From: Octopus bimaculoides
Lineage: Eukaryota
DNA length: 64,000 nucleotides
Assembly: GCF_001194135.2 (NCBI RefSeq)
Contig: NC_068986.1
Coordinates: 72,784,383 to 72,848,382 of the forward strand
Reading direction: 5' to 3'
Positions 16,252 through 52,300 of this stretch are shown here, one piece after another. The notes under the pieces were generated by a model. The model was not told where the DNA came from and searched no databases. It saw nothing but the letters and a program-made list of their open reading frames with translations. Each line of letters opens with the position of its first letter. Position 1 is the stretch's first letter. Position numbers and translations under genes: made by a program.

Positions 16252-18155
16252 CTGTATATATATATGTGTATATATGCATGTGTGTATATGTGTGTGTGTG
16301 TGTGTGTATACACACAGGGTGTGATGGGTAAATTGTCGCCATTTTATATTTTTAAATTCGTGCATGCGCATTGTTTGTTTTTAATATTGTCGCCTACACA
16401 GTATAGTAGGGTCAGTTGGGCACTGTCTGTGAGAAAAACAACATCATGGCGCAAATCACTCTGCCAATGATTTGGAAGCAACGTGCTATATTGCTTGTCA
16501 TTCATGCCAGAAGCTCCAATATGAACATTTCAGAGTGTTTGAGTGTCAATCTGAGGACATGTACTGAGAGTGATAAAAATCAAACATCCAGTCAACATCA
16601 TGGTGTTTGGAGTGATTACTAGTGATGGCGATGTCATGCTTCCATCATCTTCTCACACAGCCTCAGACTCAACACAGAGACCTACATCAAGTGCCTGGAG
16701 GAGGTAATGCTGCCCAGAGTGGCTGCTGGAACACCCTATGTCTGGCAACAGGACTCTGCACCATGCCACAGAAGCAAGAGAACCCAGTCATGGCTGTCAG
16801 ATAATTTCTGTGACCACATCACCCCTAACATCTAGCAACCTAACTCCCCAGACTGCAACCCCCTTGATTATTATGTGTGGGGTGCAGTTGAGTGAGAGAC
16901 CAACAAAACTCCTTGTAACACCAAAGATAAACTGAAGACAAGGATTACGGCAGCATTCAGCAAATTAAACAAGGAGACCACCCAGAAGAGTTGCAGGAGA
17001 TTCTGAAGTCATCTGGAGGCCATAGTTGAAGCCAATGGCGATTTTATTGAATAAATTTACTCTTTAGTATTTCAAGATATTTTTATGTAATTTTGGTAAA
17101 TATATCAGTTAAAATGAGAAGTTAGTGTTATTTTCATTTTTGCGTAATTTAGACAACTTATTTGTGCGTGCATGCGTGTGTGCACACACACACATAATGG
17201 GCTTCTTTCAGTTTCTGTCTATCAAATCCAATCACAAGGCTTTAGTAGAAGACATTTGCCCAAGGTGCCACACAGTAGGACTGTACCCAGAACCATATGG
17301 GTGGAAAGTAAACTTCTTACCACACAGCACCTGATGAATGCAGAAAATAAAAAATGGGTGTGGGATTTGTGGTGTTGGATATAGCAAAGATGATAGGAAG
17401 ATTAGAGACAAGTAGAACAGGAGTGCCTGAATGGAGATGGCATGAGTCCAATCAATTCAAAAGGAAAAAGGCTATTATAAGGATATTATAGAAGCAGTAG
17501 AAAAGGCAGAGAGGAAGCAGCATGCCTGTAGTCCAGAAGCAGGAGCATGTCTGCGAATGATAGCATTTAAGCAAAAACAATTTATCGGTGTCTTTTTATC
17601 TAGAATTTTATCAAAGTCTTTAATTTGGATAAATCTAAAAAGAGACAACAAATAGCTTTAGAATAATTTAACAACTTTTTTTAATCACTTCAGTAACCCA
17701 AAAAATTATTCAGTGTTAGAATATTAGCTAATTCAGAAAGCTGTTACTCAAACACTCACCTCTGTAAGGGTTGTATTTTACCATTCTCATATGTTACTGC
17801 TCCACCTAAATAAATATCAAATATATAAATATACTTCTTCCCAATTAGCTACAAGGAGGTGCTGAAAAATTCTTGGCTTTGGGTAAAAGAAAATACAGGA
17901 GGATCAGTTAATTATGATTGTATTCAACATATTCCCCTCTCAGATTTACACACTTATTGTAGTGATTCTTCAGTTTTTCTAAGCCCTGTAAAAGAACTTG
18001 GAAGATTGGGCCTCCAACCAGGCTTTTTGTGATACCCCTAAAGCCAGGAACTTTTGAGCACCCTCTCATGCAGATGCTACATTCCACAACTGAAATTTAC
18101 TCTCCCTCTTCCAGTTGTCTATATTTATGTGCATGTATGTATGTGTGTTTGTGTG

Positions 18156-18213
<58 letters not shown>

Positions 18214-21200
18214 CACACACACAAGTAAGTGAACAAATGAAAGAAAGAGGCACTCAACATAGTAAGAGTTATATATTATTATTATTCAAAACTACTTGAT
18301 TCAGCCCCAAGCAAGTTTTGTAGGCTCATTACAGGAACCTATGAAACTTTAAGTAGCATGAGGCTGAGTCAAATTGTTTTAAATAATATATATACATACA
18401 GTGTGGGCCAAAAGTCATGTACCAAAATCTTTGGTTACGATATTATGTTATTATTATCAGGTGCAGACCCCCTCAAGAAATGAAGTACGTCCTTCTAAAT
18501 AATGTTATTTCACCCTTTTCTCTTGGGACTGTATTCCTTTCAAAAAATTCTTGGAACTGCACCTGATCATTATTATAGATTTAGTTTATTATATACAAGT
18601 ATATTTTTATTTATCATGATTTTGTTTATTTTATTCAATTTTAGAAAAATTGAAATGTGTTTTTGACAGCTGTAGAGTATACTGGACTTATTTTGTGTAT
18701 GACTTTTGGTCCACCCTGTGTATCAGACAAGGGAAAAGATGAAGATATCAATATAGCACAAGTTTAATATTGGTTACAATTGTTTCAGTACCATTCCACT
18801 TTGAATGATTACACCATTACATATAAATGATAATGTGTGATAAATTACATAAAACCAGTATAAATTCACTCATGGTTAAAAAGCACAGAGCGGCACTTCA
18901 TCAGACTCTTACCAAATCTTTGCTACTACCTTTTATCTTTTACTAGTTTCAATCTTTGGACTGTGGCCATGCTGAGGTGCTGCTTTGAAGGTTTTAGTTG
19001 AACGAATCAATTCTAGTACTTACTTTTTAAAACCTGGTAGTTATTCTATCAGCCTTTTTTTGCCAAGCTACTAAGCTATGGGAATGTAAACAAATCAACA
19101 CCAGTTGTCAAGCAACAGTGGGAAACAAACACAAAGTGACACGCACATCATCATTCAACATCCATTTTCAACCACCTTACTGCAGGTACTAGGTACTTTA
19201 TTTCTTAACAAAAGCAGTAGTGTGGCTGCCAAAAAACTTGTAAGACAAGCTCCCTTGACTGTGTGGAAGTGTCATAGAGAAGGAGATGGCTTTATGCTAA
19301 ATGTTGAAAGGCTAAAATATGGCAGAGGAACAGGAACTGGTGTGTTGCTACAGAGGAGATACATGGAGAACCATTATATGCCAAAAAAACTTACCGAAAG
19401 TGCAAATGGTGTTATCTATACCAGATGGTGTTCCATGAATTATACACTCACTTCTAAAAGCCCAAGCATCAATTTTTTTCAGATCTTCCAGAGTCCAGTG
19501 GTGGTTCAATGTATTTTTGTGAAGATGGGTGATCATCTGCTGTTGCTGTAAGAGAGCTGCTGATAAACATACGGCAATACAAGCAGATGAGCCAAGACCA
19601 GCACCAACAGGAAGTTCAGCAATAACTGCAATTTGGATAGACGGTAATTCTCTGAAACACAAATTATGTACTTTGATTAAATAAAGAAAATATAATCAAA
19701 ATGTTTTTAATGGATTCAGTTCATACAGACGAGGAAAGTTATTTGCTTAAAGTTATATGCACATATAATTTTTCTTTTCTACACCCCTTTTCTCATTCAC
19801 TCTTTCTCACTCTCTACCTCTCTATTTCTGTTCTTCTTAGCATTTTCCTGTAACTTTCATGTATAAATTATCATGTCAATTGTTTACATAGTGCAGCAGT
19901 TCTCAACCATTTGTTTTACCTATGGATCCCTTTGATAACTATTTTACTTGGGTGGACCCCAACAGCCATTCACTGTTTAAAAACTAGTTTTATACAAACT
20001 TCTTTCAAAATTCCTATTTTGCTTTCTGCATATTCACTTGTGTAGGTTGAACTATGTAAAACATTAGAGAAAGAAACCCAACACTTTCTTGCAATAAATA
20101 CATCTAAAGTAAAATTTTTTCATGGACCCATAAGATATTGTGGCCCCAATTTTCCTATTTTCCTTGTGTGGAACCCCCAAAATCTTATGTGGGCCCCAAA
20201 GGGTTATATGGACCGTGGTTAAGAACTACTGGCTTAAACAAATAATGTTTGGTCAAGTTGATCCAGATTAAAATATTTGAAATATATCAATATGTCAGTT
20301 AAAGTGTGGAGAATGTTAAATCAGTAACAATACAGTTTCTCTTCACTTGTATCCTCTTAAATAATTTATTCTCACCTTTTATGGATTTAACTAAAAGAAC
20401 TAGGCACAGGTGTGGCTGTGTGGTAAGTTTGCTTCCCAACCACATGGTTCCAGGTTCAGCTCGATTGCATAGCCCCTTGGGCGAGTGTCTTCTGCTATAG
20501 CCTTAGGATGACCAATGTCTTGTGAGTGGAAAGAAGCTCATCATATATGTGTAAGTCTCCTCCTTGTCTTGACATCATGTGATAGTTATAAATGATTATA
20601 GTCCTTCAGTACTGTTCTGACCTCGTTTACAGATTCATATTTTTTCCATCCAAATGATTTTGAAGACTGCAGAATAAATGATAATCAGATGGGGCAATGT
20701 CCAGCAAATATGGTGGGTTTCCCATTCAAACTGCTCCAGCCTTTGAAATGTCAACCTCACTGTATGTGACCGAGCATTATCCTGATGGAAGAACACCTTT
20801 CGTCTTGAAACCAAAGATGGTCATTTTTCTTCTAGTACTGACTTGAATGACCAAATCCAAGCCTCTATGCTAGTTCCTGAACAATTACAGTGGGATTTTG
20901 TTTCACCAGGGTTTGCAGGACATCCTCATCAAGCTCTACAGATCTTCCAAGACAAGGCTCGTCTTCTAGGCTGTAGTTTCCAGCTCAGAATTTCTGGAAC
21001 CACCATTGACACTGGCTTACACTTATTGTCCGATCCCCATATACTACATTAATATTCTTCACATTTTCCGTTGCATTGTTGTTTTTACTGAACTCATAAA
21101 GCAAAATATGCCAAATGTGCTCCTTTGTCAGTTCCATTATAGCTTTGAAAAGAATAACTGTTAAAATCAAACTGCATTCTTCAAAACTTGCACTACGAAT

Positions 21201-24200: not shown

Positions 24201-26144
24201 TGAGTATTTGGGATGTCATCCCCAAATACCTCTGACTCATCTCCAAACCAGCTTTTATACTAACATTAACTATTACTGTCTCTGTGCAATTTATATCAAT
24301 CCAATTACTAACAAATCAAAGCAACACACACCTCCAACTTCTAAACTTTCTAGTATTTCAACAACTTGTTGAAGCTGCACTATTTCTATAGACATTGAAA
24401 AAGCCTTCAATTGTGTCTAGCATGTAAATCAATCAAAACTTCCCATCTGTATGCCCCACTATCTCTCATTCCTTGGATTGGAAATTTTCTGATTGCACAG
24501 TTGTCACATGTGTCAATGGAGCTCTTTCTGCCCTATTCTTGATCAACTTTGGTGTTCCCCAGGATCCAGTACTGTCACCCACGCTCTTCCTTATATATAT
24601 AAACATAATTAAGGGATCAGCAACAGTTGCTTCACCACATACCGAAATTTTAGAAATAGCAGTTAAAGTGTTAATTCTAAAATAAGTCTCCAACAGATAG
24701 CAATACTAATCCTTTACCCTATATTTATTAATAAATTAATAATCCTAACTATATAACTCTCAATAAAAATAAATATATATATATATATATACCAATAACC
24801 TACTTGTCACCAAATCCAACAACACCAACTCTTATGCAGATGGCACAGCCCTTCATTCCTCTCTAACTTTTCCCAATCATGTATCATCCACACATAGCCT
24901 AGACATCATACACCAAACTTGCACTGATTCTACAAATGGAAATCTTGAGAGAATCCTTTGGTTGGGACCATTCCAACTTTGTTTCTCTTAACAACAGAAA
25001 AGAAGCTCAAGCACCACTCATATGAACCAAGTACACACACACACACACCCTAAATACAAGAAGTCCTCAGCTAGATCCCTCACGTCATTCCTAAGACACT
25101 CTTCTCTTCAGGGCCAGAAAATATTCCAGCCCTAACAGCTGCTGACACTCTGTGAAGCTCACATTTGGGAGGGTGCTGCACATAAAAAATCTTGGACTGC
25201 GTCCAGAGAAGGGAGCCACTCGACTAACTGGTATTAAACAACTGACACGCCCAAACTCTGGTTTTCATGATTCTTGTCTCTTCTTTCTATCTTTTCTGTG
25301 ACTACAATAACGGCCTCTGTTCCGCGGAGGCGGTTGGTCGTCTACAGCAACCACTCAGGCATTCGATCCCACTCATCTTTCTACATTGAATTCGACTCCC
25401 TCGGCTCCGCACTAATCATTATGCCCGGTCCTTTTTTCCCCAGGACATCGTCTTTCTGGAATCTCTTTATTCATGTCTTTACTACAGGTGTTGCCTGCAA
25501 CAGATTAAACAGAACATTAACGACTTCTGGCTCGCCGGTCTTGGAGGGTCTGCAAAAGTCATAGGTGCCTTCCATTCTTCCAAACCTAATACGTAGAAAC
25601 TATGCATCAGCTGTATCGATTTGACTTGTCTGGAATGAGTGGGGTTGCGAAAGTCGTGGTACCGCCCTTTCAATTCAGACTAACTTAGCGGAGGGAAAAA
25701 ATGATCGTTCAATAATTTTAATAAGAGCGATTGACCGAGAAGAAAACAATATGAATGATTCAAACAAAAGTTAAATGTCATCAATGAAAGTCCAAGTTGG
25801 CGAAGAAAAAAATAAGACATTTTTGTTCGGCTTGAAATTCTTCAAACATCTTAAAAGTACAAAAAGATTTAGAAAATGTAATTTATTTCTGCAAGGAATT
25901 TTGTAGCGGGTAAAGAACTAAAAGTTGAAAAACAATCAGTTGTGTTTCTGAGATACATTTTTTAATGCGTATCTTATCAATTACGGTAATAAACCTTATG
26001 TTGTTGTAGTTTTACCGGACAATATATGAGATATATGCATAACAATAACAGAACAAATCTTCTTACCTTTCCATAAACAACAGCATGTTCGCCGAACAGA
26101 ATTAGTTTTCCAGGAGCCGATACAGTAATTGAATTCATGACCAT
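9738..26144 (-). CDS. MVK: Mevalonate kinase (GHMP kinase family), 9 coding exons, 1182 nt, 393 aa
   Basis: Exons (minus): 26144-26067, 23256-23109, 21736-21586, 19651-19395, 17805-17760, 15401-15311, 14949-14839, 13062-12909, 9883-9738, all GT-AG and phase-consistent. Motifs SAPGKLILFGEHAVVYGK, ELPVGAGLGSSA, IHGTPSGIDN, SAKLTGAGGGGC are present. Confidence 0.97.
10275..10672 (+). mobile_element. Full-length tRNA-derived SINE (dominant family in the window)
   Basis: ggcgtaggagtggctgtgtggt (A box) ... gggttcagtccc (B box), ccttgggcaagtgtcttc-like core, (TG)n linker, 3' tail ...gactgaaacaagtaaaagag; many partial copies elsewhere (e.g. 11000-11620, 13150-13340, 17190-17330, 20400-20580, 27670-27860, 51370-51700, 63260-63790). 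Confidence 0.85.
11061..11318. mobile_element. hAT (Charlie-like) MITE
   Basis: TIR cagtggttctcaa...ttgagtaccactg; perfect 8-bp TSD ttttagat at 11053-11060 and 11319-11326. Confidence 0.9.
12195..12350 (+). mobile_element. Penelope-like retroelement terminal fragment with degenerate hammerhead-like core
   Basis: ttgaagagcgtagctcaaaacgttaaagactttctc resembles (C/T)TGA.GA-G...C-GAAAC PLE termini. Confidence 0.45.
12909..13062 (-). CDS. MVK: MVK coding exon 8 (ELVDLNHCQLAALGVSHPSL...KLTGAGGGGCAFAIL)
   Basis: 154 nt; GHMP motif 3. Confidence 0.96.
13857..14077. mobile_element. piggyBac-like MITE with TTAA flanks
   Basis: ttaa|cctctt...gaatgctaaaggg|ttaa; related copies at about 55670-55858 and about 9972. 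Confidence 0.7.
14548..14770. repeat. Degenerate minisatellite, about 14-15 bp unit (gtagtcatatgtagt)
   Basis: Repeated gtagtcata(t/g)gtagtg units visible directly. Confidence 0.8.
14839..14949 (-). CDS. MVK: MVK coding exon 7 (YPEVMQKIMDVIHGIS...YPVLE)
   Basis: 111 nt, phase 0/0. Confidence 0.92.
15311..15401 (-). CDS. MVK: MVK coding exon 6 (NFKLNVLIINTKIQRSTRKLVEGVKQKMAR)
   Basis: 91 nt; NTK..R.T..LV.GV motif; gtaagt donor. Confidence 0.93.
15651..16176. mobile_element. Tc1/mariner-derived foldback MITE built from two transposase 3' ends
   Basis: Ends cagggttattcaa(g/a)aagaatgaacca (28/30 inverted match); about 175-bp arms; minus-strand WPVRSPDLTVCDFFLWGYVK...DDLKHRITTAI...HIEHS*; plus-strand IWEEFSYSIDVARAAGGGHIEHL*. 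Confidence 0.9.
16177..16314. repeat. Compound (TG)n(TA)n microsatellite
   Basis: Directly visible. Confidence 0.95.
16315..17165 (+). mobile_element. Internally deleted Tc1/mariner of the DD37D (maT) type
   Basis: YVWQQDSAPCH...PNSPDCNPLDYYVWG, with 37 residues between the second and third Asp (one is a premature stop); C-terminus LEAIVEANGDFIE*. Confidence 0.85.
17760..17805 (-). CDS. MVK: MVK coding exon 5 (GGAVTYENGKIQPLQ)
   Basis: 46 nt; tttag acceptor, gtgagt donor. Confidence 0.92.
17852..18068. mobile_element. mariner-type MITE
   Basis: ta|caaggaggtgctgaaaaattcttggcttt versus aaagccaggaacttttgagcaccctctc inverted ends. Confidence 0.8.
18399..18718. mobile_element. Tc1/mariner MITE
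   Basis: TIR cagtgtgggccaaaagtcat / atgacttttggtccaccctg (18/20); TA on the left; internal inverted repeat atcaggtgcag / ctgcacctgat. Confidence 0.8.
19395..19651 (-). CDS. MVK: MVK coding exon 4 (ELPVGAGLGSSA...HGTPSGIDNTICTF)
   Basis: 257 nt; ATP-binding loop and catalytic Asp (SGIDN). Confidence 0.97.
19894..20231. mobile_element. hAT (Charlie-like) MITE, older
   Basis: cagcagttctcaacc ... ggttaagaactactg; no clean TSD. Confidence 0.65.
20620..21270 (-). mobile_element. Deleted mariner transposase remnant
   Basis: MELTKEHIWHILLYEF...VYGDRTISVSQCQWWFQKF..GNYSLEDEP..GR; then PPYLLDIAPSDYHLFCSLQNHL (YSPDLAPSDY-like). Confidence 0.85.
21586..21736 (-). CDS. MVK: MVK coding exon 3 (DELAQRP...LFLYLYLAICINSSQ)
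   Basis: 151 nt; FLYLYL motif; gtaagt donor. Confidence 0.93.
22330..22760 (-). mobile_element. Probable LINE ORF1-like remnant in an MVK intron
   Basis: NHEVIAIGISED...HLG*PGLKSKLIRLSFSNSSEA resembles the N.II.G.PE...RLG....RPI.V.F.S pattern of LINE ORF1 RNA-binding domains (inference). Confidence 0.4.
23109..23256 (-). CDS. MVK: MVK coding exon 2 (MAISSSLNMRSFIRL...KKLSEEFT)
   Basis: 148 nt; tttacag acceptor, ACAG|gtatgg donor. Confidence 0.93.
23900..25545 (+). mobile_element. Decayed CR1/L2/Jockey-type LINE (RT and 3' end)
   Basis: DIEKAFNCV, GVPQDPVLSPTLFLIYIN, NSYADGTAL, FFPRTSSFWN. Confidence 0.82.
26067..26144 (-). CDS. MVK: MVK coding exon 1 (MVMNSITVSAPGKLILFGEHAVVYGK)
   Basis: 78 nt; GHMP motif 1; donor AAG|gtaaga. 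Confidence 0.95.
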
Positions 26145-27660: not shown

Positions 27661-27856
27661 TTGCATGACTCCTTCATTAATCTTGTGGCCTACATAGGTG
27701 CAAGCATGGCTGTGTGTAAGAAGTTTGTTTCTCAAACACAAGGTTCCTGGTTCAGTCTCACTGCATGGCTCCTTGGGCAAGAGTCTTCTACTATAGCCCC
27801 AGGCCAACCATAACCTTATGAGTGGATTTGGTTGAAGGGACAATGAAAGAAGCCTC

Positions 27857-27903
<47 letters not shown>

Positions 27904-29329: not shown

Positions 29330-30818
29330 CGGAAAATCCTTGTCTTCAATGGCGTTGGCAGTGTAGCTCCTCGTGGGGCTCTGCTCCCATTCACATTACT
29401 AACTCACGGCGCACAATGCCTCCATGACACCAAACGAAACCACATCTCCTCCAGCACTGACACCTCCAAGGTGGTCAGTTGCATCCATCCCCATTACTAC
29501 GTCGATCCTGTCTACCACATGGTCGATCACGATTGCCCGAAGCCTTAGCGTTGTGTCTTGCACCACTATATCCACATAGCTGCTACTCTTGCATTTGATT
29601 ACGCTGCCATCGACCACCCAAATGCTACTCATCCCCTTCCATTTCTTTGTCACGAGAGTCGTCATGCAGCCCATGTTCACGAGGGCCTTGAACATGTTTC
29701 CCCTGAACATGACCTCAACTATGGGTAGTGACTTCACCAACACCTCTACTCGTTCGCGGGGGAAGTTTGAGAGGCAGCAACTTCCCCATGGCCTTTTCCC
29801 TGGCTACAATTCCAGGTGATATGCCCAGTCTGTTTGCACTGGTAGCAAACTGGTCCGGACTCCACACAGTCCCTTGCCATGTGCGGTCCTTGTGAACAGC
29901 TGTTGTTGTTCCAAAGTAGGCCTCTTTTCATCCTTCTCTGGCTCCATGCAGATTCGCAGGCTTCTGCGGCCACCATCATCACTGCCTTCCGCCTAGTGCT
30001 TTGTGTCAACATACGGGCTTGAACAATGAGCTCGCTCATCACCATTTTGTTGCTGCCTAGCAACTGTTGTAGTCACTCTGACACGTCATTGGGAAAGCCA
30101 TTCATAAAAGCCAATTGCGCTACTTTCTCAAGTCCCTCAACGGTAAGACCAGACAACACAACCAGCCTCCGTACCTCCACAGCGTATTCGTCGATATGTT
30201 CCCCTTTCCATCTGATCATTCCCAGCTTAGCAAAAGTGGTGTACTCTCCATCTGTATAAGCCTCTCTCAAGCGCTGCTTGATCATTGCTGCACTCAGCTG
30301 TTCTTCTTCATTTCGAGGTACTGTGCCAGTGCACTCCCCTCCAAATACAGGGCCATGCGGCTTGCTACATCTTCAATGCCTTGTAGCCTGGCCACAACTT
30401 TGACCTTTCGAATCTAGGCTACTAAGTCACCTTCACCATAGAAAGGTCTGATGACATCACTGCCGATCTTTATCTTCGCTGCCATCATGTATCAAATGGA
30501 CAACAATGTTTGTATACAATTGCTGAAATAGCTTGTTGTTTGTGGAAAATGAAAAGAGGTTCTCCTACCTTCCTCTCTTCTGCAACCATCTAGTAATAGT
30601 CACTCCAGCTATCCTGCCCTACCCTGTTACCCAGTATAGGCAGCTGCTATTTCACCAGCCTGAGAGCAAATTCCCTCCCTTCTGTTTGCAATGCCTCAGC
30701 CAGCCAAAAGAGCACAACCCTGTCCTGTCCCCACCGCACTCCCCTTCTCATGCTTCCTCTCCCAGTCAGTCCCTTGACCATTGATGTCATGGCCCTCTTC
30801 TTCTGGCTCATCCCCACA
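29330..30818 (-). mobile_element. Truncated Ty3/gypsy LTR retrotransposon: 5' LTR 30818-30488, PBS-like site, gag, zinc knuckles, protease
   Basis: LTR tgtgggga...tttgataca followed by tgatggcagcg; gag MMAAKIKIGSDVIRPFYGEGD...LAFMNGFP; C..C..GPHMARDC and CYQCKQTGHITWNC; protease FKALVNMGC (ALVDTGC-like), IDVVMGMD; no RT, integrase or second LTR seen. Confidence 0.88.
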
Positions 30819-31974
30819 GTTGAGCATCTAAGTATGTTTCCTTCCACGGACACCCAGCAACTAAACAGTTAAACTTTTAACTATTAGTGACAGAAATAAT
30901 GCTAAAAAATATCCTAGATGCAATTGGAATTATAATAGAAGACAATATGGAAACTCCATCATTTGTTCAATACATACTGAATCATGATGCAAATTAAAGG
31001 CTCGTGTTAGATGTGTGAAGTAAATTTTACAGTTGCAACATGCAATAACAGATTCATTCAGTTTTGTTAAAGATTGTTTAATAATAAAATAGAGAGAAAA
31101 AAAAGAGTCAAAGGGGACTGTTGATGGTCTGATAATGTTTGATTATCTCTCATGCCTGGTCATTGTCTACAGAAGCCAAATCTGAAAAAGGTAGCAAAAT
31201 TGAATGAGTTTGTACACTGTAAGGAATGGTAAATAGTTATCATGTTAAAAAAAGGGGGGTGGTGAGCACTTTTTTTTAGAAGAAATAGGTTTTCTTATAA
31301 TGTCAGTATCTTAAAGTGGTAATCAACTGGATTAATGCTCAGTTAACGAAGGTATCAATATAATTCACCATATATTCCAGTGTTTAAGACACACTTTTTT
31401 TTTTTAAATGTTACAAGAAATTGTTATGCATCTAATGTGACTGTTTTACTGATGCTATAACAAGTGTATGGGTGTATGATGAATCATATTAAATGTGTCT
31501 TTGGTACAAAATAGAGGTGCATCTTATATGCCAGCAAATAAGGTAATTACATAAAGATATTAATGCAAATGTAATTTACTGGTGCAGGTACATTGACTAT
31601 TTCTGGGGAGGGGATAAGTCGATTACATCGATCCTAATGCTCAACTGGTACTTATTTTATTGACTCCAAAAAGATGAAAGGCAAAGTCGACCTCACCAGA
31701 ATTTGAATTCGGAACATAAAGACAAGAAATGCCATTAAGCATTTCCCCTGGAACGCTAAGGATTCTGCCGGCTCACCGTCTCAATAGGTGTGGATATATT
31801 GGTGCAAATATAATTTATTGGTATAGAAAGTGTGGTGTATATATTGATGTTGGTCCATTCGTTTGTTTGTTTTTATGTCTATTGTTTTTTTCCATGCTAG
31901 CATGGGTTAGAATATATTGTTATGGTATACAGCAGGATCTTATTTCTTTATTGCCCACAAGGGGCTTTTTTTAA

Positions 31975-32140
31975 AGTCGATTACATCGACCCCAGTGCGT
32001 AACTGGTACTTATTTAATCGACCCCGAAAGGATGAAAGGTAAAGTCGACCTCAGCGGAATTTGAACTCAGAACGTACTGGCAGACGAAATACCGCTAAGC
32101 ATTTCGCCCGGCGTGCTAACGATTCTGCCAGCTCGCCGCC
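31975..32140 (+). mobile_element. Well-preserved SINE segment (gtcgattacatcgacccc family)
   Basis: aagtcgattacatcgaccccagtgcgtaactggtac...ctgccagctcgccgcc; older copies at 31600-31790, 54380-54560, 54790-55030. Confidence 0.75.
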
Positions 32141-32490
32141 CTGTCAGTAAGTCCTGTCTGTTTCCGAAGGAAGGGATCTCTTGCTTTGACACGTCTTTGA
32201 CGGTACGAAGTGAATGGACGATTTGTTGATTGGAGACGGGATAACAATAATGCTACTTGTAGCTTGTGACTTTCATAGAGTATCAGTGTAAACGGACATG
32301 CACAATCAAACATAGATACATACACACACACATACATATGTACATATGTACAAACATGCATATATACATACATACATAATAATGTAGCTGGAGCGAGGTG
32401 GTGGAGGGTTGGCTGCTCAATGCAAAGCTTTTATGGAGGTGGTACTTTTGGGTATGCTGCATAAACCAGGATAGAGATGGAAAATTCAAG

Positions 32491-33940
32491 GGTCAAACTC
32501 CACTGTTTGACTCGAGCAAAAAAAAAAAAATAGTGCAATAGGTGTAAAACAGCATGTAGTAAACGAATATGAAAAAAAACTGTGCACTGGCGAACGGGGG
32601 AGAGGACTCGGAAAATTAACATCGGGAATTTCCAAGTCCTCTCACTACTTCCCTGTTGGTCGGTGAAATTTTTTCTCCATATTCGTTTACTACACATTAT
32701 TTTACACCTAGTACACTAGTTCTTATTCAATCTTTTTTATATTCGTTTACTACCTGTTGTTTTACACCTATTACACTATTGTTTTTTTCATTTTTGTGAC
32801 CGGGTGTTAACGTTGAGTTTTCGGATCCTGTGAGTTTGATCGTGTGAATTTTTCGAGTCCTGTCCTCACCTCACCCCTGTTCGCCAGCATGCATTATTTT
32901 TTCCATAATCGTTTAGGACACATTATTTTAGACTTATTGCACTTTTTCTTTTTTTTTTTTTTTTTGGTGGCCGGGTGTCGAAGTCGGGTTACTGGATCGT
33001 GTGAATTAGCCGAGTTCGCACCCCACTTGCAAAAACTAAACAAAAATAATAGTGTACTAGGGATAAAATAATGTATAGTAAACGAACTTTGAAGAAAAAA
33101 AAATTGCGCCGACGAATGGGGAAGTGGCGAAAGGACTCGGAACACTCCCAATGTGAATTTTCCGAGTCCTCTCTCCCTCCTTCATGTTCGCCAGCGCGCA
33201 TTTTTTGGTCAAACACCAGTTTTTTACCCGAGCAAAAAAATAGTGCAATAGGTGTAAAACAACACGTAGTAAACGAATATGCAAAAAAAAAAAAAAATGC
33301 GCGCTGGCGAATGGGGGCGGAGGAGAGAGGACTCCGAAAATTCATTTGCCCAAAGTGCCATGCAGTGGGACTGAAACCGGAACTGTGTTGTTGGGAAGAA
33401 TATCCATTTTCTTTAGGGTAAAAATCGGATCGTGTGAACTGTCTTGGTCCCCCACCTCCCTCACACGTATTATACTATTTGTTTTTCATTTTTGTGACTG
33501 TGTGTTAACGTTGAGTTTTCGGATCCTGTGAGATTGATCGTGTGAATTATCCGAGTCCTCTCCCCCGCTCCCCGTTCACCAGCGCGCATTTTTTTAATAT
33601 TCGTTTACTGCATGTCGAAGTGGGGTTACTGGATCGTGTGAATTATCCGAGTCTGCACCCCACCTACCCCGTCACAAAAATTGAACAAAAAATAGTGTAC
33701 TAGGTGTAAAATAATGTGTAGTAAACGAATATGAAGAAAAGCGATTTCGTCGACGAACGGGGAAGTGGTGAGAGGATTAGGAACATTCCCGATGTGAATT
33801 TTCCGAGTCGTCTCCCGCCGCCCCCTTTCGCCAGCGCGCATTTTTTTTTTCATATTCGTTCACTACATGTTATTTTATACCTATTGCACTATTTTTATTT
33901 ATTTATTTATTTTGCTTGGGTCAAATACTGGAGTTTGACC
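32491..33940. mobile_element. Non-autonomous foldback DNA transposon, probably Merlin/IS1016-like (MULE not excluded)
   Basis: 8-bp TSD aattcaag at 32483-32490 and 33941-33948; termini ggtcaaactcca / tggagtttgacc (26/30 over the terminal 30 bp); about 240-bp inverted arms made of repeated modules; no transposase. Confidence 0.88.
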
Positions 33941-34538
33941 AATTCAAGGACTGCTCCGGGCGGCACACTCCACCTAGGTGACTGTACATACGATAGGCTC
34001 CTTTCAGTTTCTATTCACCACAGTTCTCTCGCATGGCTTTGGTCAGCCCAGAGCTACAACAAAAAATGCCTTCTAATATAGGCCTCAAAACATATTGGTC
34101 ATGAAATATTGGGTATAGAATATTTCCTGCCAAAGATTGGTCTAGAATTCAGACAAATGAAGAGAGCCACTAAGGAAATAGGTATGGCAGCTGATACCAG
34201 CTCGATGTGTCTGTAATTGACGAGAGACTATAGATGGGACCCTTCTGCTGGCGAAGACTAATTCAGTCCTCGCTGCTCCACTCAGATGAAGCATAAAGGC
34301 TAAAGGGCGCGACACTTGTGATCTTGAGATACACGCTGATGATACAGAATGATTTCCAACATTGCGATGAATTCAGAAGAGCTTGCTCCTCAGTAATTCC
34401 CTTAATTTCTGCCTGGGACAAAGCATCTTCGATGTTTATTTCACTTTGGTGTAGACATCGTAGTCGACATATTGATGTATATTTAATTTATTCGTCTAGA
34501 TATATAAGTATATACATAAATTGGTGTAGCTATATTAT

Positions 34539-34539
<1 letters not shown>

Positions 34540-34594
<55 letters not shown>

Positions 34595-34636
34595 TATAGA
34601 TAGATAGATAGATAGATATAGAGAGAGAAAGAGAGA
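34540..34636. repeat. Compound (TG)(TA)n(GATA)n(GA)n microsatellite about 100 bp upstream of the FBXO21 ATG
   Basis: Directly visible. Confidence 0.95.
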
Positions 34637-34733
34637 TTTATTGACAGATGTTAATATATTGGTAATTCCGAAGACGAAGTTGATAAAATATTTGGGGGAG
34701 ATAACTCTTGCATTACAATTCAAACGAGAAAAC

Positions 34734-34903
34734 ATGGCAGTCGAGGTGAAAATTCTGCCACAGCTTCCAACAGAGATTTTAGTGAAAATTCTGTGCTGTG
34801 ATACAGTTTCACATGTCGATATTTGTCGGCTAGCCTTTACTTGCCATCGAATGAGAGACATTTGCCTCACAGAAAATATATGGAAATGTAAATTTTTTCA
34901 ATG
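34734..34903 (+). CDS. FBXO21: FBXO21 exon 1 (F-box)
   Basis: MAVEVKILPQLPTEILVKILCCDTVSHVDICRLAFTCHRMRDICLTENIWKCKFFQ; TG|gtaagt donor. Confidence 0.93.
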
Positions 34904-37900
34904 GTAAGTTGGTATGGCGTACTTTTTTCTCACTAATTTCATTAACCTGTTTTGAGTTGGCTGGATTCCTGTTTTATTTTGGTCTGCTATATGAACTCAG
35001 TAGAAAACAAAAGTTGAAGAACTAGAAGACAACGAGACTTATAGGGTTGTCACATGACCCTTCTCGTAACTTTTTATACAATTGCGAATTTATCTTTTCG
35101 CGTTCAAATGCTGAAACAACTTTCTTCAATAAATATTTAAGCAGAGCTGTATATTTTGGTGAATGAAATTCACAAAGAGCCAAAGAACGTAACCATATGA
35201 ATGCAACAGAAACTTACACATTCTTAAAACTCATGACTAATTCGTCTTCATTGATGTGAAATACCAATTTTCGTATCTTCCTGTTAAGTTTCTTCGCATC
35301 TGTGTCAGTCTAAATATTCTCAATGTTTTGTTTACATACAATATCCTTGTCAGGCTCCATAACATTCTTCGTAGCGATAATCAAACAACGTGTTTACACA
35401 TTGAAGTCCAGATCATTTAACCTGTTGTATTTTTATATTCACTTATATTGAGAATATTTGATATAAGTTTCTAATGTACTTAAGTGAATACTCCTTGGTT
35501 TTATAACTCGCCAAACTACTATACTAAATATGAATGATATTATTACTAATAAACCCCAACAGTAAAATATTTTGGTAAATTTTTTAAAACTTTACCGATA
35601 TTTTACCCCCCCCCCCCCAAGTTGTGTTCTGAAGTAGGACATGTTGCGTGTTGGATGGTTAATTGACAAGAAAATTACGTATGTTTGATACAGCAAACTG
35701 TTCTAAAATCGTTTGTGTAACTATTTCATTCCAGCTTTTAAGAAAAATAATAATAAACGAAAATATCGCATAATCTTGTTTCCTAATAAATCTAAGACCT
35801 TGTATCTAAGTAAGAAATTATTTCGGAAATGGATCGTCAAGATATACTGATGAAGGAACATATATTTTATTAACAAGTCATCCGAGGCGATGTAGTGATT
35901 GTCTTTATCGTTCCACTTAACCGTAACAAACGGACGACTTCTGGAAGGACATGTGCCGTGGGGAAGGGAGGAATACTGAGGGCAGCGTTTTGGGAACGAA
36001 GGACTGGTCGTAGTAATTAGTACGAGGCCTGAGAGGATAGATATTATAGGTGATGAGAAGAGGAGGGACAAGTGAGTAGAGAGAGAGTATGCAAGTGGGG
36101 GTGACACGGGAATAGCCAGTTCAGATGAGTAGAGACAATTTGTAATTGCGGTAGAATAGGTAGAGCAGCGACTGTATGTATTTAAGCTAGGAGTTGCACA
36201 TGTCTGAGTGGCTTCACGTCAATCAGTCAAGTAGACTTTCTCCGTATAAGTTTGGGATGTCTTTGTGTGTAGCAGCTGCACTGTCCCAGATGTGAGAGTA
36301 GCACTCTGTCGTGAGCCTCTCATCAGCTATTCTACAATTGGATAAAAAATAGTGTCAGTGGTACAGACTTAGAGTAGTTCATCATCATCATCATCATTTA
36401 ACGTCTGTTTTCCATGCTCGCATGGGTTGGACGGTTTGACAGAGAGCTGCACCAGATTCCATTTTCTGTTTTGGGATGGTTTCAACAGCTGGATGCCCTT
36501 CCTAACACCAGCCACATTACAGAGTACACTGGGTGCTTTTTACATAGCACCAGTACAAGTACTAAAAGACAAATATTAGCAGGAATCTTACATGTGGTTA
36601 CAAATTTGTTGGTTTATGGTTAGAGGAGAAGTGTGTACCCAGTACTTTTGAACTCAGTACAGTGATGTAGTTGAAGTAAGTGATGTTTATTTTGTTCTGT
36701 AGGTTCTGTGCGTAGTTGCACTGCTGTCAAGATAAATGTTTCAGACTTGTTGTTCTGGCAGAAAAGCTGTGTTTAGTGTTGGGTAAGTGTGATAAAAATT
36801 TTAGTTGGTCTGATGAGTGGAGGAGATGCAGGTTCAATGAATACAGAAGTGAAGACATTATAGTAGCATTAAAGAGATGGTCGTGGGTCACAATAGCATG
36901 TTGATGGGCTAGTTGTTTTATCAAATAATTAGGATGAAGAGCTGGCTGTCATCTTTGGCAGTGAGGTTGATGTGGTCCATCACCAGTTCTGTTGATTTTT
37001 TTAAAGATCTTGACACTATAAGGAAACTTATTTTTTCTTTAAAAACAAATCCCCCACTTTTATTTATTTGTCTATTTATTTTAATGTATTACATCGTGAA
37101 AATTCCATTTTGTTCAGGTGAATAAAAATTTTAATCTAAAATTTAACATTTAATGAACATATTTAATTAACATTTAATGAATATATTTTGACTCCCTTAC
37201 CTCAGTGACAATCAGAGAGTGAATATACAAATCATAACCTTATATAAGCTATCCAAAGTCATCACTGGGTGGTCAGAGGGGCAGATAATGAAATGAAATA
37301 CATTTACATGGCACCCATGAGTTGTAGTTGTTGCCAGTGCCATGCAAATGACATCCATGAATCATAGTCATGGTCACTGCCGGTACCATGTAAATGATAC
37401 CCATACATCGTAATTGTGGTCATTGCCAGTGTCTTGTAAATGGTACCTGTGATGATGGCATGTAAAAGTACCCATTACACTCTTGGAGTGGTTGGCATTA
37501 GGAAGGGCATCCAGCTGTAGAAACCATGCCAAATCAGACTGGAACCTGGTGCAGCTCTCCTGATCATTAGCTCCAGTCAAAGCGTCTAACCCATGCCAGC
37601 ATGGAGAGTGGACGTTAAATGATGATGTAAGAATTTAATCTCTCCTTCTAGTATAATACAAACTTGTTCAAGTTTGCAAACTTTATTCTCAGATTTGTTC
37701 AGGTGTGAGAGACAACCAAATATTGTTAGACCATCTTGTCCTTTTTCTTCCCTCTATCTTAGCAAAACTAAATGAACCTCTTATTGTATATTGATACTGT
37801 AACCTTTACTTCAGACAGCTACTCTAACACTTACCTTTAATTTGTACCATGATTCAGTATGTATTGAACCAATGACAGAGTCTCCCCATCATCTTTTATT

Positions 37901-49334: not shown

Positions 49335-52300
49335 ATTTGTGAAAGCTAGTAAAAAAATGAAGCAACATGCTCTGTTTGGTGTGAAATGTTAATGTGCATG
49401 AATGACATAGACAAATGAGCTTAGAGAAATTGTTTCTGTTAAGCATCCATCTACTCTCCTACCTTCTCTTCATTAAATTCATTCTTTTTTTTTTTCTTTT
49501 TTCTTTTTAGTCAAACTTCATGTTTTCCTGCTAGACGTTCAAACAATTTTGTCTCAATTAATACTTTGTTTTTTTTTTTGTTTTTACTGTTTTAAAAATT
49601 TTATTTTCTTATAGTGGTTTCACAACATTGCAACAAAGCTGTTGAGGGTGGGTCGTATTGCAGAGGGTCAGTTGATGGTACGTAATTACATGAAGCTGGC
49701 TATTTTATTAGACCCTGAAGATCTGGATATGCTGGCTGTCTGGGTAGAATATAATGTTAGTGCTAATGTTAATTTAGAACAGGTAGGTACAATTTGTTAT
49801 TTGAGTTTTACTGCAGATTATTTCTAAGTTTTTAACACAACAGCAATAGAAAACTAACAAATGTATTAAACTTTGGTTAAGTTTATTTTTTTCTTTTACT
49901 TTATATTCAAAAATTTTGTTCTTTAACTCACTATTTGCTTATCAAGAAAATGTGATGTAATTACAGCTACTGTGAGAACATTTAAAACAGATTCTGTAAT
50001 TGGATGTTGAGTTTTTATTTCATAAAACGACCAGATTATTTTTATTCCTTGTTTTAGCTCCTATAATGGTGATTTTATTTGTTATTTAGTATAAGCTCAC
50101 AGTTTATTGTCCAGTGTTAATAGTTGTTACATTTTTTGCGTCGTTACAGTCAAATATTTATGTTTTATATCATTGTGTGTGGGTGAGAGAAGATTTAATA
50201 TATTTTCTTATTTGATCTTTTTGAGAGAAGGTATAGAATTTTTTAATGAGTGTAAAAAAATGAGATTATGCTAATATATTTTAATTGATAGCACCATCTA
50301 CTATATTAAAAGCTGTTGTGAAAAATCACAAAATAATATTTATATAAAAAGAAACCTGTATAACAATGATTATTTTCCCCCTCTTTTTAGTATGAAATAT
50401 TTATTTATTTGTAAAATTATTCATGTATCTATTTTTTTTCTAAGAAATTCTATTTTCACTTCTTGCCTGATTTCTGTATTTGAAGGTGTTGATTAGTGCC
50501 CAAAGACTTTTGTGCTCTGAAGTTCAAAGATTCCAGTGTCTTGGCAAGAGACTTATTCACCGTATTGAAGAAGAACTTGCAAAAGATGGCGAATCTAAAC
50601 CAGTTAGTTTCTCATTTTCGTTTTTATCATAAATTATAGGGAAATATAAACATTAGTTGAAAATAACATAAAAATTAGACATTTTATTTACTTAGAAGTA
50701 GGTGTTGATTTGTTTTTCTAAGATAAATTCCTGTTTAACCTACACATTCTCTTTTCTCATTTTAGACTATGTTCCCTTTTGCTTCACCTTCATCATATTT
50801 ATAGAGACATATAATATTCTTCTTTAGTTATATTGCTGTAGCCTAAATGTTGTAACAATGTGTTTTTAATACATCTATTGCTCTCTTTATATTTGTAAAT
50901 ATAAGGAGAGATTATTTTCATGGCCTTTTTAGGACTTGTGCAGTTAGATGACCAGAACAACTATTTGAAGTTTACAAAGAGTTAAAACTGAAATAGTTTT
51001 CGTCCTGGTCCAACCCTAACATTTGTAATGTAATCTTAGCTGTGAGTGAATGTGGAATTTACATGAGAGGTTATCAGTGTTTGTTTGGCCAATCATTTAT
51101 ATGCACTGTAATATTTTGAAGTGCTTGTTGCTCACATAATCATGATATAATATTGTGAATTTGTTTCATTAATATGCAGAATTCAAAGATTTTGGTATAG
51201 TTGAATGTGACTAGATGTAGTGAGAAGAGTTGAGTTTGGATATAATTTGTTTGAGTAATTAAAGGAAATACTGAAGATAATTAAAGAAAATACTTAAGAT
51301 TTTAGTGTGACAGCTGGAATATTTGGTAGCTGTCACCATTTATTAGCTGTGGACTTAATGGAATCTATTATCTTTTTTCTTTTGACTGTGGTCATGCTGG
51401 GGCACTACCTTGAAGGATTTAGTCAAACAAATTGATCCAAGTAATTTTTTTATAAACCTGGTACTTATTCTATCAGTCTCTTTTGCTGAACCGTTAAGTT
51501 ACAGGGATGTAAACAAACCAATACCAGTTGTCAAGTTGTGGCAGGCTTCATTCAGTTTCCATCTACCAAATCCATTCACAGTCTTTTGTAGGCTCCAGGC
51601 TATAGTAGAAGACACTTGCCCAAGGTGCCATGCAGTGGGATTGAACCCAGAATCTTGTGGTTGGGAAGCAAACTTCTTACCACACAGCCATACCTGTACC
51701 TATAAAGCTCATGAGGAATGAATGGGCTAGCAAAAAATGAAAAATGGATGTTTGCATACATGAAAGCTATGAGTATAGCTTTACTTCAGGAGGACTACTT
51801 ATAAAATAGACAAAAACATTCAGCAAACTGAATCCACGTAATAAGGAACCAAACAGTACAATAAGGAAGAGTTGATGAATTGTGTTATTCAAAGACATGT
51901 TTTATGCTAGGGATAAAATGTTTGTACATATTACATTTGTCTAACAATGTCTTTCAGTTTGTATGAATTCAAAATATAAGTGCTTGGCTAAACAGTCTCT
52001 GATGATCTCTCTGGTTTGAATAATTCACCTTTTATAAACTCCTATCCTCACCAAACTTTTCTGTCTTTCTCTCTCTACAGAAATCTATCTCTATGGAAAC
52101 AACAGTATGTCCTATTCCCATGAAGAGTAACTTCCCTTGTCAACTATGTCTCTAATTTCATTCACTTCCAACATGAAAAAGAAAATAGCATCAATCTAAA
52201 ACAATTGTCTTAATCACCTTCAGTGATTAACCAGCAACTTTGCTAACTTAAGTCATTACTCATCACCTTCTCCATCAGATTCAGTCTCTCTCTCCTCACC

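What the first reader, a model, noticed from the sequence alone, without database searches (positions are those of the whole stretch)
32483..33948. 1450-bp modular foldback transposon (GG ends, 8-bp TSD) in the MVK/FBXO21 divergent interval
Seen: exact TSD aattcaag; termini ggtcaaactcca...tggagtttgacc, each with a small gtcaaa/tttgac hairpin; about 240-bp inverted arms (about 32491-32730 and 33676-33940) that are themselves palindromic. The whole element is about 13 full or partial copies of one about 95-bp module (tagtgcaataggtgtaaaa...tagtaaacgaatatg-An-tgcgcgctggcgaacgggg...gaggactcggaaaattcaca) in alternating orientation. It is CpG-rich and non-coding. Known: Merlin/IS1016 elements have 8-9 bp TSDs and terminal GG, whereas hAT and P ends usually begin with CA or TA. 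Inference: a probably undescribed Merlin-like foldback family. Its nested hairpins could form cruciforms or dsRNA, and its repeated modules could be transposase- or factor-binding arrays next to the FBXO21 promoter.
Basis: partly seen in the sequence, partly recalled or inferred. Interest (0 to 1): 0.78.

Follow-up and report, generated by a model that had tools for sequence, protein, structure and literature searches.

The report
Rearranged two-unit foldback transposon upstream of FBXO21
This is an ordinary non-coding cut-and-paste DNA transposon from a family of tens of copies in an octopus genome, present here as a scrambled head-to-tail pair of about 0.8-kb hairpin-rich units inserted just upstream of where FBXO21 transcripts start; it is a useful annotation, not a new kind of element.

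Summary
There is an exact 8-bp duplication (aattcaag), GG…CC termini, about 245-bp inverted arms that are themselves palindromes, CpG-rich repeated modules and no coding capacity.

Reads from other individuals show that the family's other copies lose similarity exactly at 32491 and 33940. The ends are therefore real and the duplication is 8 bp, not 9.

The "1450-bp element" is not one unit. It is two diverged, colinear direct repeats (32491-33206 and 33207-33940, 84.5% identical). Unit 2 starts with a second copy of the left terminus. Unit 1 lacks its right end. Unit 2's left hairpin is broken and patched with 56-83 bp of an extremely abundant SINE.

The unit junction and the right junction are confirmed at single-copy depth in four individuals. 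The left junction could not be verified.

Merlin remains the best guess for the superfamily. Authentic octopus Merlin elements fetched here also have GG ends, 8-bp duplications and long TIRs. However, they share no sequence with this element, no transposase partner was found, and Mutator-like elements (8-11 bp) are not excluded.

The element ends about 37 bp upstream of the point where RNA contigs of the FBXO21 5' region begin. Any regulatory role is untested.

This is a new member of a known kind, of low to moderate interest.

The parts
32483..32490 (.). Left target-site duplication, aattcaag
   Evidence: Identical to 33941-33948. Other family copies lose similarity at 32491, which fixes the boundary.
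32491..32517 (+). Left terminal module T (GGTCAAACTCCACTGTTTGACTCGAGC), a terminal hairpin
   Evidence: The family consensus from reads is GGTCAAACTCCAGTGTTTGACCCGAGC; this copy differs at 32503 and 32512.
32491..32735 (+). Left arm: T, A+, B+, B-, A-; itself a palindrome
   Evidence: 89% complementary to 33676-33940. DNA fold -52.5 kcal/mol, z = -10.6.
32491..33206 (+). Unit 1 of the dimer: T A+ B+ B- A- / A- C B- A- C2 B-(truncated) / A+ B+ B-. It lacks the final A- and right terminus (about 94 bp).
   Evidence: Colinear alignment with unit 2: 84.5% identity over 477 aligned positions. Module map.
33207..33233 (+). Internal second copy of the LEFT terminal module T (GGTCAAACACCAGTTTTTTACCCGAGC), marking the start of unit 2
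   Evidence: Family D13 (85%); one mismatch to the terminal 12-mer. Exact contigs covering 33147-33301 (33147-33295 in some runs) at single-copy depth span the junction in the three of four individuals whose listed pieces cover it.
33207..33940 (+). Unit 2 of the dimer: T A+ B+ / filler / C2-B-(truncated) A-(truncated) C B- A-(truncated) C2 B-(truncated) / A+ B+ B- A- T-
   Evidence: It lacks the 58 bp that unit 1 has at 32894-32951.
33343..33425 (-). SINE-derived filler replacing the second half of unit 2's left hairpin. 33343-33398 matches SINE positions 89-34; the similarity fades by about 33425.
   Evidence: Matches other SINE copies in the window. Read depth is about 1.7 million against about 46 for single-copy sequence. 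CpG o/e is 0.28.
33676..33940 (+). Right arm: A+ B+ B- A- (TTTA)n T-; itself a palindrome
   Evidence: DNA fold -57.2 kcal/mol, z = -10.9.
33914..33940 (-). Right terminal module T
   Evidence: Family depth drops from about 1300 to about 130 after 33940, and other copies' flanks diverge there.
33941..33948 (.). Right target-site duplication, aattcaag
   Evidence: Exact 728-732-bp contigs span 33832-34100 in four individuals.
33977..34904 (+). Neighbouring gene, not part of the element: the transcribed FBXO21 5' region (RNA contigs from 33977, one from 33863) and first coding exon (ATG 34735, splice donor after 34904)

Best explanation
The feature is a non-autonomous, cut-and-paste (class II, TIR) DNA transposon of the foldback/MITE type. 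It belongs to a family present in tens of copies in this genome. The genome is an Octopus species, probably O. bimaculoides.

A transposase supplied in trans would recognise the terminal module. In the family consensus this module is a small palindrome (GGTCAAAC-N6-GTTTGACC), followed by an A-run and arrays of two CpG-containing motifs, A and B. The element inserted at aattcaag and duplicated 8 bp.

The copy at this locus is not a simple element. It is a head-to-tail composite of two diverged units of about 0.8 kb. The outer left end of unit 1 and the outer right end of unit 2 are the functional-looking ends that the TSD flanks. At the inner junction, unit 1 has lost its right terminus. Unit 2's left hairpin has lost its second half, which was replaced by filler copied from a SINE.

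This is the scar pattern expected from double-strand-break repair with template switching at unstable palindromes. The steps of that history are inferred, not shown.

The most likely superfamily is Merlin (about 0.5). A Mutator-like element is the main alternative.

The element sits in the non-CpG-depleted promoter zone of FBXO21. It ends about 37 bp upstream of where RNA contigs begin. Its effect on the gene is most probably neutral or modest and was not tested.
For: - Exact 8-bp TSD next to 12/12 complementary termini.
- In four individuals, contigs from other genomic copies align up to exactly 32491 (15-18 contigs per run) and 33940 (6-9 contigs in two of the runs), then diverge into unrelated flanks with agreement of about 0.44.
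- Module depth is tens to hundreds of times single-copy depth.
- No coding capacity and no known RNA family.
- Unit 1 and unit 2 are colinear direct repeats, and there is an internal copy of T.
- The unit junction and the right junction lie in exact single-copy contigs. Flanks upstream of T in other copies do not read "...GCGCATTTTTT", so dimers are not the usual form.
- The filler is a SINE fragment.
- The arms are strong palindromes.
- For Merlin: GG ends and an 8-9 bp TSD define the superfamily, and O. bimaculoides is unusually rich in Merlin, with 191 proteins (PMC8101967). Three authentic octopus Merlin insertions fetched here have GG...CC ends and 8-bp TSDs. The two full-length copies have about 354-bp TIRs, and the MITE derivative has short subterminal repeats followed by an A-run.
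- Promoter position.
Against: - No autonomous partner was found. The 8 Merlin-bearing loci examined share no TIR or module sequence with this element, apart from one 19-bp match of doubtful meaning.
- Only one copy's TSD could be read, so the family's TSD length distribution is unknown.
- An 8-bp TSD and long TIRs also fit Mutator-like elements (PMC5225508, PMC6446971).
- No short-read contig covers the left junction (32478-32490), and no long reads were available.
- The order of events that made the dimer is inferred, including whether it formed before or after insertion here.
- No empty-site allele or orthologous empty site was seen, so mobility at this locus rests on the TSD and the family-level boundaries.
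Confidence: 0.8

Rival explanations
1. The element is a non-autonomous Mutator-like (MULE/Foldback-type) element, not a Merlin. It would be mobilised by a MULE transposase, with this copy's 8-bp TSD at the short end of the MULE range.
For: - MULE TSDs are 8-11 bp and their TIRs are commonly hundreds of bp (PMC6446971).
- Muta1 makes 8- or 9-bp TSDs, and Spectre makes 8 bp.
- Octopus genomes carry more Mutator families than Merlin families: 55 against 18 in O. vulgaris (PMC13282606).
- From my own knowledge, Drosophila Foldback elements are classed with MULEs.
Against: - 8 bp is the typical Merlin TSD and the minimum for MULEs.
- GG termini are universal in Merlin (PMC8101967).
- All three octopus Merlin insertions inspected show exactly GG ends plus 8 bp.
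- No octopus MULE was examined, so this rival was not tested directly.
Confidence: 0.25
2. The dimer arose in place. A single unit of about 0.8 kb inserted at aattcaag and was later partly duplicated by replication slippage or template switching between its own repeats. On this view the dimer never moved as a dimer.
For: - The unit1/unit2 junction is single-copy.
- Other copies are not preceded by the B-/polyT context.
- The TSD flanks the outermost ends.
- Palindromic arrays are prone to such rearrangement (established knowledge).
Against: - The units are only 84.5% identical, similar to the divergence between different family copies.
- At the sites inspected, the units share no derived differences from the family consensus. 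This fits two different source copies, or a very old duplication.
- A perfect 8/8 TSD after that much time is possible (p of about 0.4) but not favoured.
Confidence: 0.35
3. The arrangement is an assembly artefact: a collapse or chimera of repeats, not a real locus.
For: - No Logan contig covers 32478-32490.
- The left flank 32418-32477 is itself a repeat of about 10-15 copies.
- No PacBio run could be listed, and the raw-read samples were too sparse.
Against: - Exact contigs at single-copy depth cover 32550-32698, 32823-33301 (including the unit junction), 33641-33713 and 33787-34100 (including the right junction). They come from individuals sequenced in 2015, 2022 and 2025.
- The perfect TSD links the two outer junctions.
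- The missing link is the kind of low-coverage bridge between two repeats that contig assemblers drop.
Confidence: 0.04
4. The element, or its right arm, has been co-opted as part of the FBXO21 promoter. It would supply CpG-rich factor-binding arrays or the transcription start, and perhaps divergent transcripts.
For: - RNA contigs begin at 33977 in two runs, 37 bp from the element's end. One 284-bp RNA contig runs from 33863 inside the right arm into the 5' region.
- A unit 2-specific RNA contig (33328-33555) and a few strand-biased raw RNA reads exist.
- The element is part of a 4.5-kb zone that is not CpG-depleted.
Against: - Depths are very low (3-8).
- Contig ends are not mapped transcription starts, and genomic DNA carry-over cannot be excluded.
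- There are no accessibility, methylation or reporter data.
- There is no evidence of conservation or selection.
- Insertion near promoters is common for DNA transposons and needs no function.
Confidence: 0.15

Closest known systems
Merlin superfamily (eukaryotic relatives of IS1016/IS1595) and their MITE derivatives
   Same: Both have 5'-GG...CC-3' termini, an 8-bp TSD and a TIR length inside the reported 24-462 bp range (PMC8101967). The octopus Merlin insertions fetched here (L002/L004, and the MITE in L007) show GG ends and 8-bp TSDs; the full-length copies have about 354-bp TIRs, and the MITE has short subterminal repeats followed by an A-run.
   Different: No DDE_Tnp_IS1595 gene is associated with these termini. 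The terminal and module sequences are unrelated to the Merlin TIRs examined. Here the terminal 22 bp is itself a palindrome and each arm is a long hairpin, which was not seen in the L002 Merlin.
Foldback-type elements (Drosophila FB, and Galileo of the P superfamily)
   Same: Both have very long inverted arms built from short repeated motifs and little or no unique middle. They are non-coding, rearrange frequently, and have strong hairpin potential.
   Different: From my own knowledge, FB makes 9-bp TSDs and is classed with MULEs, while Galileo makes 7-bp TSDs. This element makes 8 bp, starts with GG and shares no sequence with them. The resemblance is architectural only.
Mutator-like elements (Muta1, Spectre and non-autonomous MULEs)
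   Same: Both have long TIRs. TSDs of 8-9 bp are documented for Muta1 and 8 bp for Spectre (PMC5225508, PMC6446971). Both tend to insert near genes.
   Different: The typical MULE TSD is 9-10 bp. No MULE transposase or TIR similarity was tested or found here.
MITEs in general
   Same: Both have TIRs and a TSD, lack coding capacity, are multi-copy with sharply conserved ends, depend on a transposase in trans, and commonly lie next to genes.
   Different: At 1450 bp (units of about 0.8 kb) it is larger than the usual MITE size of under 800 bp. It is also internally rearranged into a dimer with captured SINE filler.

Membership tests
Class II TIR transposon, non-autonomous (MITE/foldback type) | Terminal inverted repeats flanked by a direct target-site duplication | tested here: met
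   The terminal 12/12 bases are complementary, the arms are 89% complementary over 245 bp, and there is an exact 8-bp TSD.
Class II TIR transposon, non-autonomous (MITE/foldback type) | Multiple genomic copies whose similarity ends precisely at the termini, in different flanks | tested here: met
   There are 15-18 contigs per run ending at 32491 and 6-9 contigs in two runs ending at 33940, with unrelated flanks. Terminal depth is about 30-100 times single-copy.
Class II TIR transposon, non-autonomous (MITE/foldback type) | No transposase coding capacity | tested here: met
   The longest ORF is 118 aa. A 1620-aa six-frame translation had no hit at E <= 0.01.
Class II TIR transposon, non-autonomous (MITE/foldback type) | Evidence of excision or insertion polymorphism (an empty site) | tested here: inconclusive
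   No empty-site joint was seen in four individuals' contigs. No other species' runs were found. Contigs show presence, not absence.
Merlin superfamily | TIRs begin with 5'-GG (PMC8101967) | tested here: met
   Both ends and the internal T copy begin with GG. The family boundary falls at the first G.
Merlin superfamily | 8- or 9-bp TSD (PMC8101967) | tested here: met
   The TSD is 8 bp at this copy, the only copy that could be read. The 9-bp reading is disfavoured by the family boundary and by the GG-only right and internal ends.
Merlin superfamily | Mobilised by, or derived from, an element encoding a DDE_Tnp_IS1595 transposase with the same TIRs | tested here: not met
   The 8 loci fetched around Merlin-like genes (O. 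bimaculoides, O. sinensis, O. vulgaris, one Logan contig and one ENA contig) contain no GGTCAAAC terminus or A/B/C modules. The sample is tiny, about 0.1 Mb, so this is absence of evidence and not a valid exclusion.
Mutator-like elements | TSD 8-11 bp, typically 9-10; long TIRs (PMC6446971) | tested here: inconclusive
   8 bp is at the lower limit and the arms are long. Only one TSD is available.
Mutator-like elements | MULE (MURA-type) transposase partner | not tested
hAT superfamily | 8-bp TSD with termini of the form YARNG (own knowledge) | tested here: not met
   The TSD length fits, but the termini are GGTCA..., not CA/TA-RNG.
P superfamily (including Galileo-type foldback elements) | 7-8-bp TSD with termini starting CA (own knowledge) | tested here: not met
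   The termini are GG...CC.
Drosophila Foldback (FB) family | 9-bp TSD; arms made of tandem short repeats; MULE-related transposase (own knowledge) | tested here: not met
   The TSD is 8 bp. The arms are palindromic module pairs, not graded tandem arrays. The resemblance is architectural only.

The most novel reading that the evidence does not exclude
The family is a CpG-rich, promoter-seeking Merlin-derived foldback lineage whose ends are terminal hairpins. At this locus its right arm would have become part of the FBXO21 core promoter. It would seed an unmethylated CpG-island-like zone and drive divergent transcription through the palindromic arms, giving hairpin dsRNA or small RNAs.
Probability: 0.08. 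Interest if true: 0.55.

Novelty: new member of a known kind. Interest (0 to 1): 0.25.

Why it matters
For annotation, the result gives exact ends, the TSD, the module grammar and a corrected two-unit architecture for an octopus DNA-transposon family. Automated libraries would probably label this family "unclassified TIR/MITE".

The locus is a clean example of how palindromic transposons decay. It shows loss of one hairpin half, loss of an inner terminus and capture of SINE filler. It also places a CpG-rich repeat array within a few tens of bp of a gene's apparent transcription start.

If a Merlin partner were found, it would link the unusually large Merlin complement of O. bimaculoides to a MITE family. 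None of this would surprise a transposon specialist.

Tried and rejected
1. I tried to fetch other copies through proteins. A 1620-aa concatenated six-frame translation of the element was searched against 5.8 billion proteins and gave no hit.
2. I hunted for the autonomous partner. An O. bimaculoides Merlin protein taken from the supplement of PMC8101967 was used as a single query and then as an 18-sequence profile. Eight loci were fetched. None carries the termini or modules. The only match is a 19-bp exact match in L007, in an unrelated 100-bp repeat that flanks a SINE.
3. An exact scan of JGI metagenome contigs for the consensus terminus found nothing.
4. I looked for long reads and found no PacBio run. 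The raw Illumina runs were sampled at under 1x and could not verify the left junction.
5. I looked for an orthologous empty site in other species, but only organism A holds the flank.
7. The Rfam scan gave only sub-threshold generic miRNA-hairpin hits.
8. I rejected the 9-bp TSD reading (aattcaagg). It would make the two ends unequal, with G against GG, and the family breakpoints fall at 32491.
9. I rejected the idea that the CpG richness is purely a property of the element, because its flanks are also not CpG-depleted.
Full report

The described features are in the sequence.
- aattcaag occurs at 32483-32490 and again at 33941-33948, directly abutting GGTCAAACTCCA... and ...TGGAGTTTGACC.
- The terminal 12-mer occurs exactly only at these two places in the 64-kb window. 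It also occurs once with one mismatch at 33207, inside the element.
- The arms 32491-32735 and 33676-33940 are 89% complementary.
- Each arm folds on itself far better than shuffled controls: -52.5 and -57.2 kcal/mol, with z = -10.6 and -10.9.
- The terminal 27 nt form a small hairpin.
- The motif cores are hugely over-represented. GAATTTTCCGAGTCCTC has 10 hits against 0.08 expected. GTAGTAAACGAATATG has 8 hits inside the element.
- CpG o/e is 1.20 against 0.35 for the window.
- ORFs are at most 118 aa, and their translations have no homologue. No Rfam family reaches threshold.
- The gene context is right. MVK exons lie on the - strand (GKLILFGEHAVVYGK at 26076-26108, GAGLGSSA at 19585, TGAGGGGC at 12934). 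The F-box exon of FBXO21 starts with ATG at 34735 on the + strand.

**2.

An internal copy of the left terminal module sits at 33207-33233. Aligning 32491-33206 with 33207-33940 shows two colinear direct repeats. They are 84.5% identical over 477 aligned positions in three blocks.

I use these names for the modules:
- T: the 27-bp terminus.
- A: TAGTGCAATAGGTGTAAAACAGCATGTAGTAAACGAATATG.
- B: TGCGCGCTGGCGAACGGGGGAGAGGACTCGGAAAATTCACA.
- C and C2: GTGACCGGGTGT... modules.

The unit reads T A+ B+ B- A- | A- C B- A- C2 B-(truncated) | A+ B+ B- A- T-, which is about 0.8 kb.
- Unit 1 lacks the last A- and T- (about 94 bp).
- Unit 2 keeps both termini. After T A+ B+, the second half of its left hairpin is replaced by 33343-~33425.
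- The first 56 bp of that replacement are a fragment of a tRNA-derived SINE (SINE positions 89-34, reverse orientation).
- The SINE has at least 15 copies in the window. Its read depth is about 1.7 million against about 46 for single-copy sequence.
- Unit 2 also lacks 58 bp that unit 1 has.

So "13 copies of one module in alternating orientation" is only an approximation. The orientation is not strictly alternating, and there are several module types.

**3. Is it a mobile family, and where are its ends?**

Logan contigs from individuals sequenced in 2015, 2022 and 2025 show the modules at tens to hundreds of times single-copy depth.
- Contigs from other copies align up to exactly 32491 (15-18 per run) and then continue into unrelated sequence, with agreement of about 0.44.
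- On the right, depth falls from about 1300 to about 130 after 33940, and 6-9 contigs (listed for two of the runs) diverge there.
- The ends are therefore GG...CC, and this copy's TSD is 8 bp.
- The 9-bp reading (aattcaagg) would leave unequal ends. It is also contradicted by the right and internal T copies, which have only GG preceded by T.
- The family consensus terminus from reads is GGTCAAACTCCAGTGTTTGACCCGAGC, an 8-bp-stem palindrome.
- Terminal depth suggests tens of elements. A modules are about ten times more numerous than T modules.

**4. Is the assembly right?**

Exact contigs at single-copy depth cover the following stretches; each appears in at least three of the four individuals in the listed pieces, and the right junction in all four:
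- 32550-32698
- 32823-33301, including the unit1/unit2 junction
- 33641-33713
- 33787-34100, including the right junction

No empty-site joint appears in those runs. No contig covers the left junction (32478-32490). The adjoining flank 32418-32477 is itself a repeat of about 10-15 copies, so the assembler probably dropped the low-coverage bridge between two repeats. No PacBio run could be listed, and the raw-read samples were too thin. I rate an artefact as unlikely but not excluded.

**5. Which superfamily?**

- The literature defines Merlin DNA features as 5'-GG termini, TIRs of 24-462 bp and 8-9-bp TSDs. It notes 191 Merlin-like proteins in O. bimaculoides (PMC8101967).
- I took one of those proteins from the paper's supplement and searched with it, then with a profile. 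I fetched eight loci.
- An 8.7-kb O. sinensis element is present at 99.6% identity on two chromosomes. It has about 354-bp TIRs, ends GGCGATGTTTCG...CGAAACTATGCC and TSDs GCAAATCT and CAAGGCTT.
- A 472-bp MITE derivative with the same ends has the TSD CAAAAGAG/CAGAAGAG.
- Octopus Merlins therefore do show GG ends plus 8 bp, as this element does.
- None of the loci shares the termini or modules. The partner is not identified.
- MULEs also give 8-11-bp TSDs (Muta1 8-9 bp, Spectre 8 bp) with long TIRs (PMC5225508, PMC6446971).
- hAT and P termini do not fit.
- My estimate is Merlin about 0.5, MULE about 0.25, and other or unknown for the rest.

**6. Species**

The window's SINE copies match a SINE in an O. 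vulgaris locus at 70-84% identity. The runs that hold the window include a 2015 genome project with matching RNA runs. The organism is an Octopus, probably O. bimaculoides.

**7. How it most likely works and arose**

- Shown: TIRs, the TSD, precise family ends, no coding capacity, the dimer structure and the SINE filler.
- Inferred: a transposase supplied in trans binds the terminal palindrome and the subterminal A/B arrays, excises the element and inserts it with an 8-bp staggered cut.
- Inferred: the dimer and its scars are the products expected of double-strand-break repair with template switching at unstable palindromes. The scars are loss of the inner right terminus, loss of one half of unit 2's left palindrome exactly at the hairpin centre, and filler DNA.
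- Unresolved: whether this happened before the insertion here (the dimer moved using the two outer ends) or in place. The junction is single-copy, which favours an in-place origin or a single move. The units are as diverged from each other as different family copies are, which favours two source copies.

**8. Relation to FBXO21**

- RNA contigs covering the 5' region up to 34530 start at 33977 in two runs and at 34032 in one run.
- One 284-bp RNA contig runs from 33863 (inside the right arm) to 34145.
- A unit 2-specific RNA contig (33328-33555) and a few strand-biased raw RNA reads also exist, all at very low depth.
- The element therefore ends about 37 bp upstream of the apparent start of transcription.
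- It lies within a 4.5-kb zone that is not CpG-depleted (31750-36250, o/e 0.7-1.3). This partly explains why its CpGs have survived.
- A regulatory role is possible but untested.

**9. Verdict**

This is a real but ordinary feature. It is a rearranged, two-unit, non-autonomous foldback DNA transposon, probably Merlin-mobilised, inserted at the FBXO21 promoter edge. It is a new member of a known kind, with interest about 0.25.

Noticed in passing
window 10295-10676 (full copy); also 11364-11621, 17184-17328, 20402-20530, 27707-27890, 51380-51690, 63604-63732 and others: A tRNA-derived SINE of about 380 bp occurs at least 15 times in the window. It is extremely abundant in the genome, with Logan word depth of about 1.7 million against about 46 for single-copy sequence. 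It matches a SINE in an O. vulgaris locus at 70-84% identity.
   Followed up: partly
window 33343-33398 and 33988-34049: The SINE filler inside unit 2 (SINE positions 89-34) and a SINE remnant in the right flank (positions 167-107) are nearly adjacent SINE segments, 17-19 nt apart, in the same orientation. They lie in swapped order, 590 bp apart. This could be chance (roughly p = 0.05) or filler copied from a neighbouring SINE during repair.
   Followed up: partly
window 29399-30285 (- strand): ORFs with a CCHC zinc knuckle and gag/protease-like sequence lie in a GC-rich block. This is probably an LTR-retrotransposon fragment in the MVK-FBXO21 interval.
   Followed up: no
window 32418-32490: The left flank 32418-32477 is itself a repeat of about 10-15 copies. 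No short-read contig from four individuals contains 32478-32489, so the left junction is not independently supported.
   Followed up: partly
window 32302-32378 and 34540-34625: An (ACAT)n microsatellite lies 110 bp left of the element.
   Followed up: no
L002 265-8996 and L004 252-8997 (O. sinensis, two chromosomes); O. vulgaris L003: An 8.7-kb Merlin-type element has 99.6% identical copies, about 354-bp TIRs, GGCGATGTTTCG ends and 8-bp TSDs (GCAAATCT, CAAGGCTT). The 305-aa transposase ORF occupies only about 0.9 kb. The element is large, apparently recently active, and carries about 7 kb of other content.
   Followed up: partly
L007 8778-9249: A 472-bp MITE with perfect 44-bp TIRs of the same Merlin family (GGCGATGTTTCG...) has the TSD CAAAAGAG/CAGAAGAG. 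It is inserted just after a Merlin-like gene in O. sinensis.
   Followed up: yes
L007 6699-6798 and 7022-7120: Two 100-bp direct repeats (93% identical) flank a SINE copy. They contain GATCGTGTGAATTTTTCGA, an exact 19-mer of window 32838-32856 at the C/B- module junction. This is either a chance match or a motif shared with another octopus repeat.
   Followed up: partly
window 33408-33911: In one 2026 RNA run, the few reads on unit 2 mostly have the first mate on the + strand. The same sample shows none on 33984-34530. This hints at antisense or upstream transcription through the element, but rests on a handful of reads.
   Followed up: partly
flanks of other family copies (reads laid at 32491 and 33940): The majority consensus of other copies' flanks reads ...AAAATTC|GG...CC|GAAA..., which hints at a weak palindromic A/T-rich target preference. 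Agreement is only 0.44-0.49, and this copy's TSD (aattcaag) does not follow it.
   Followed up: no
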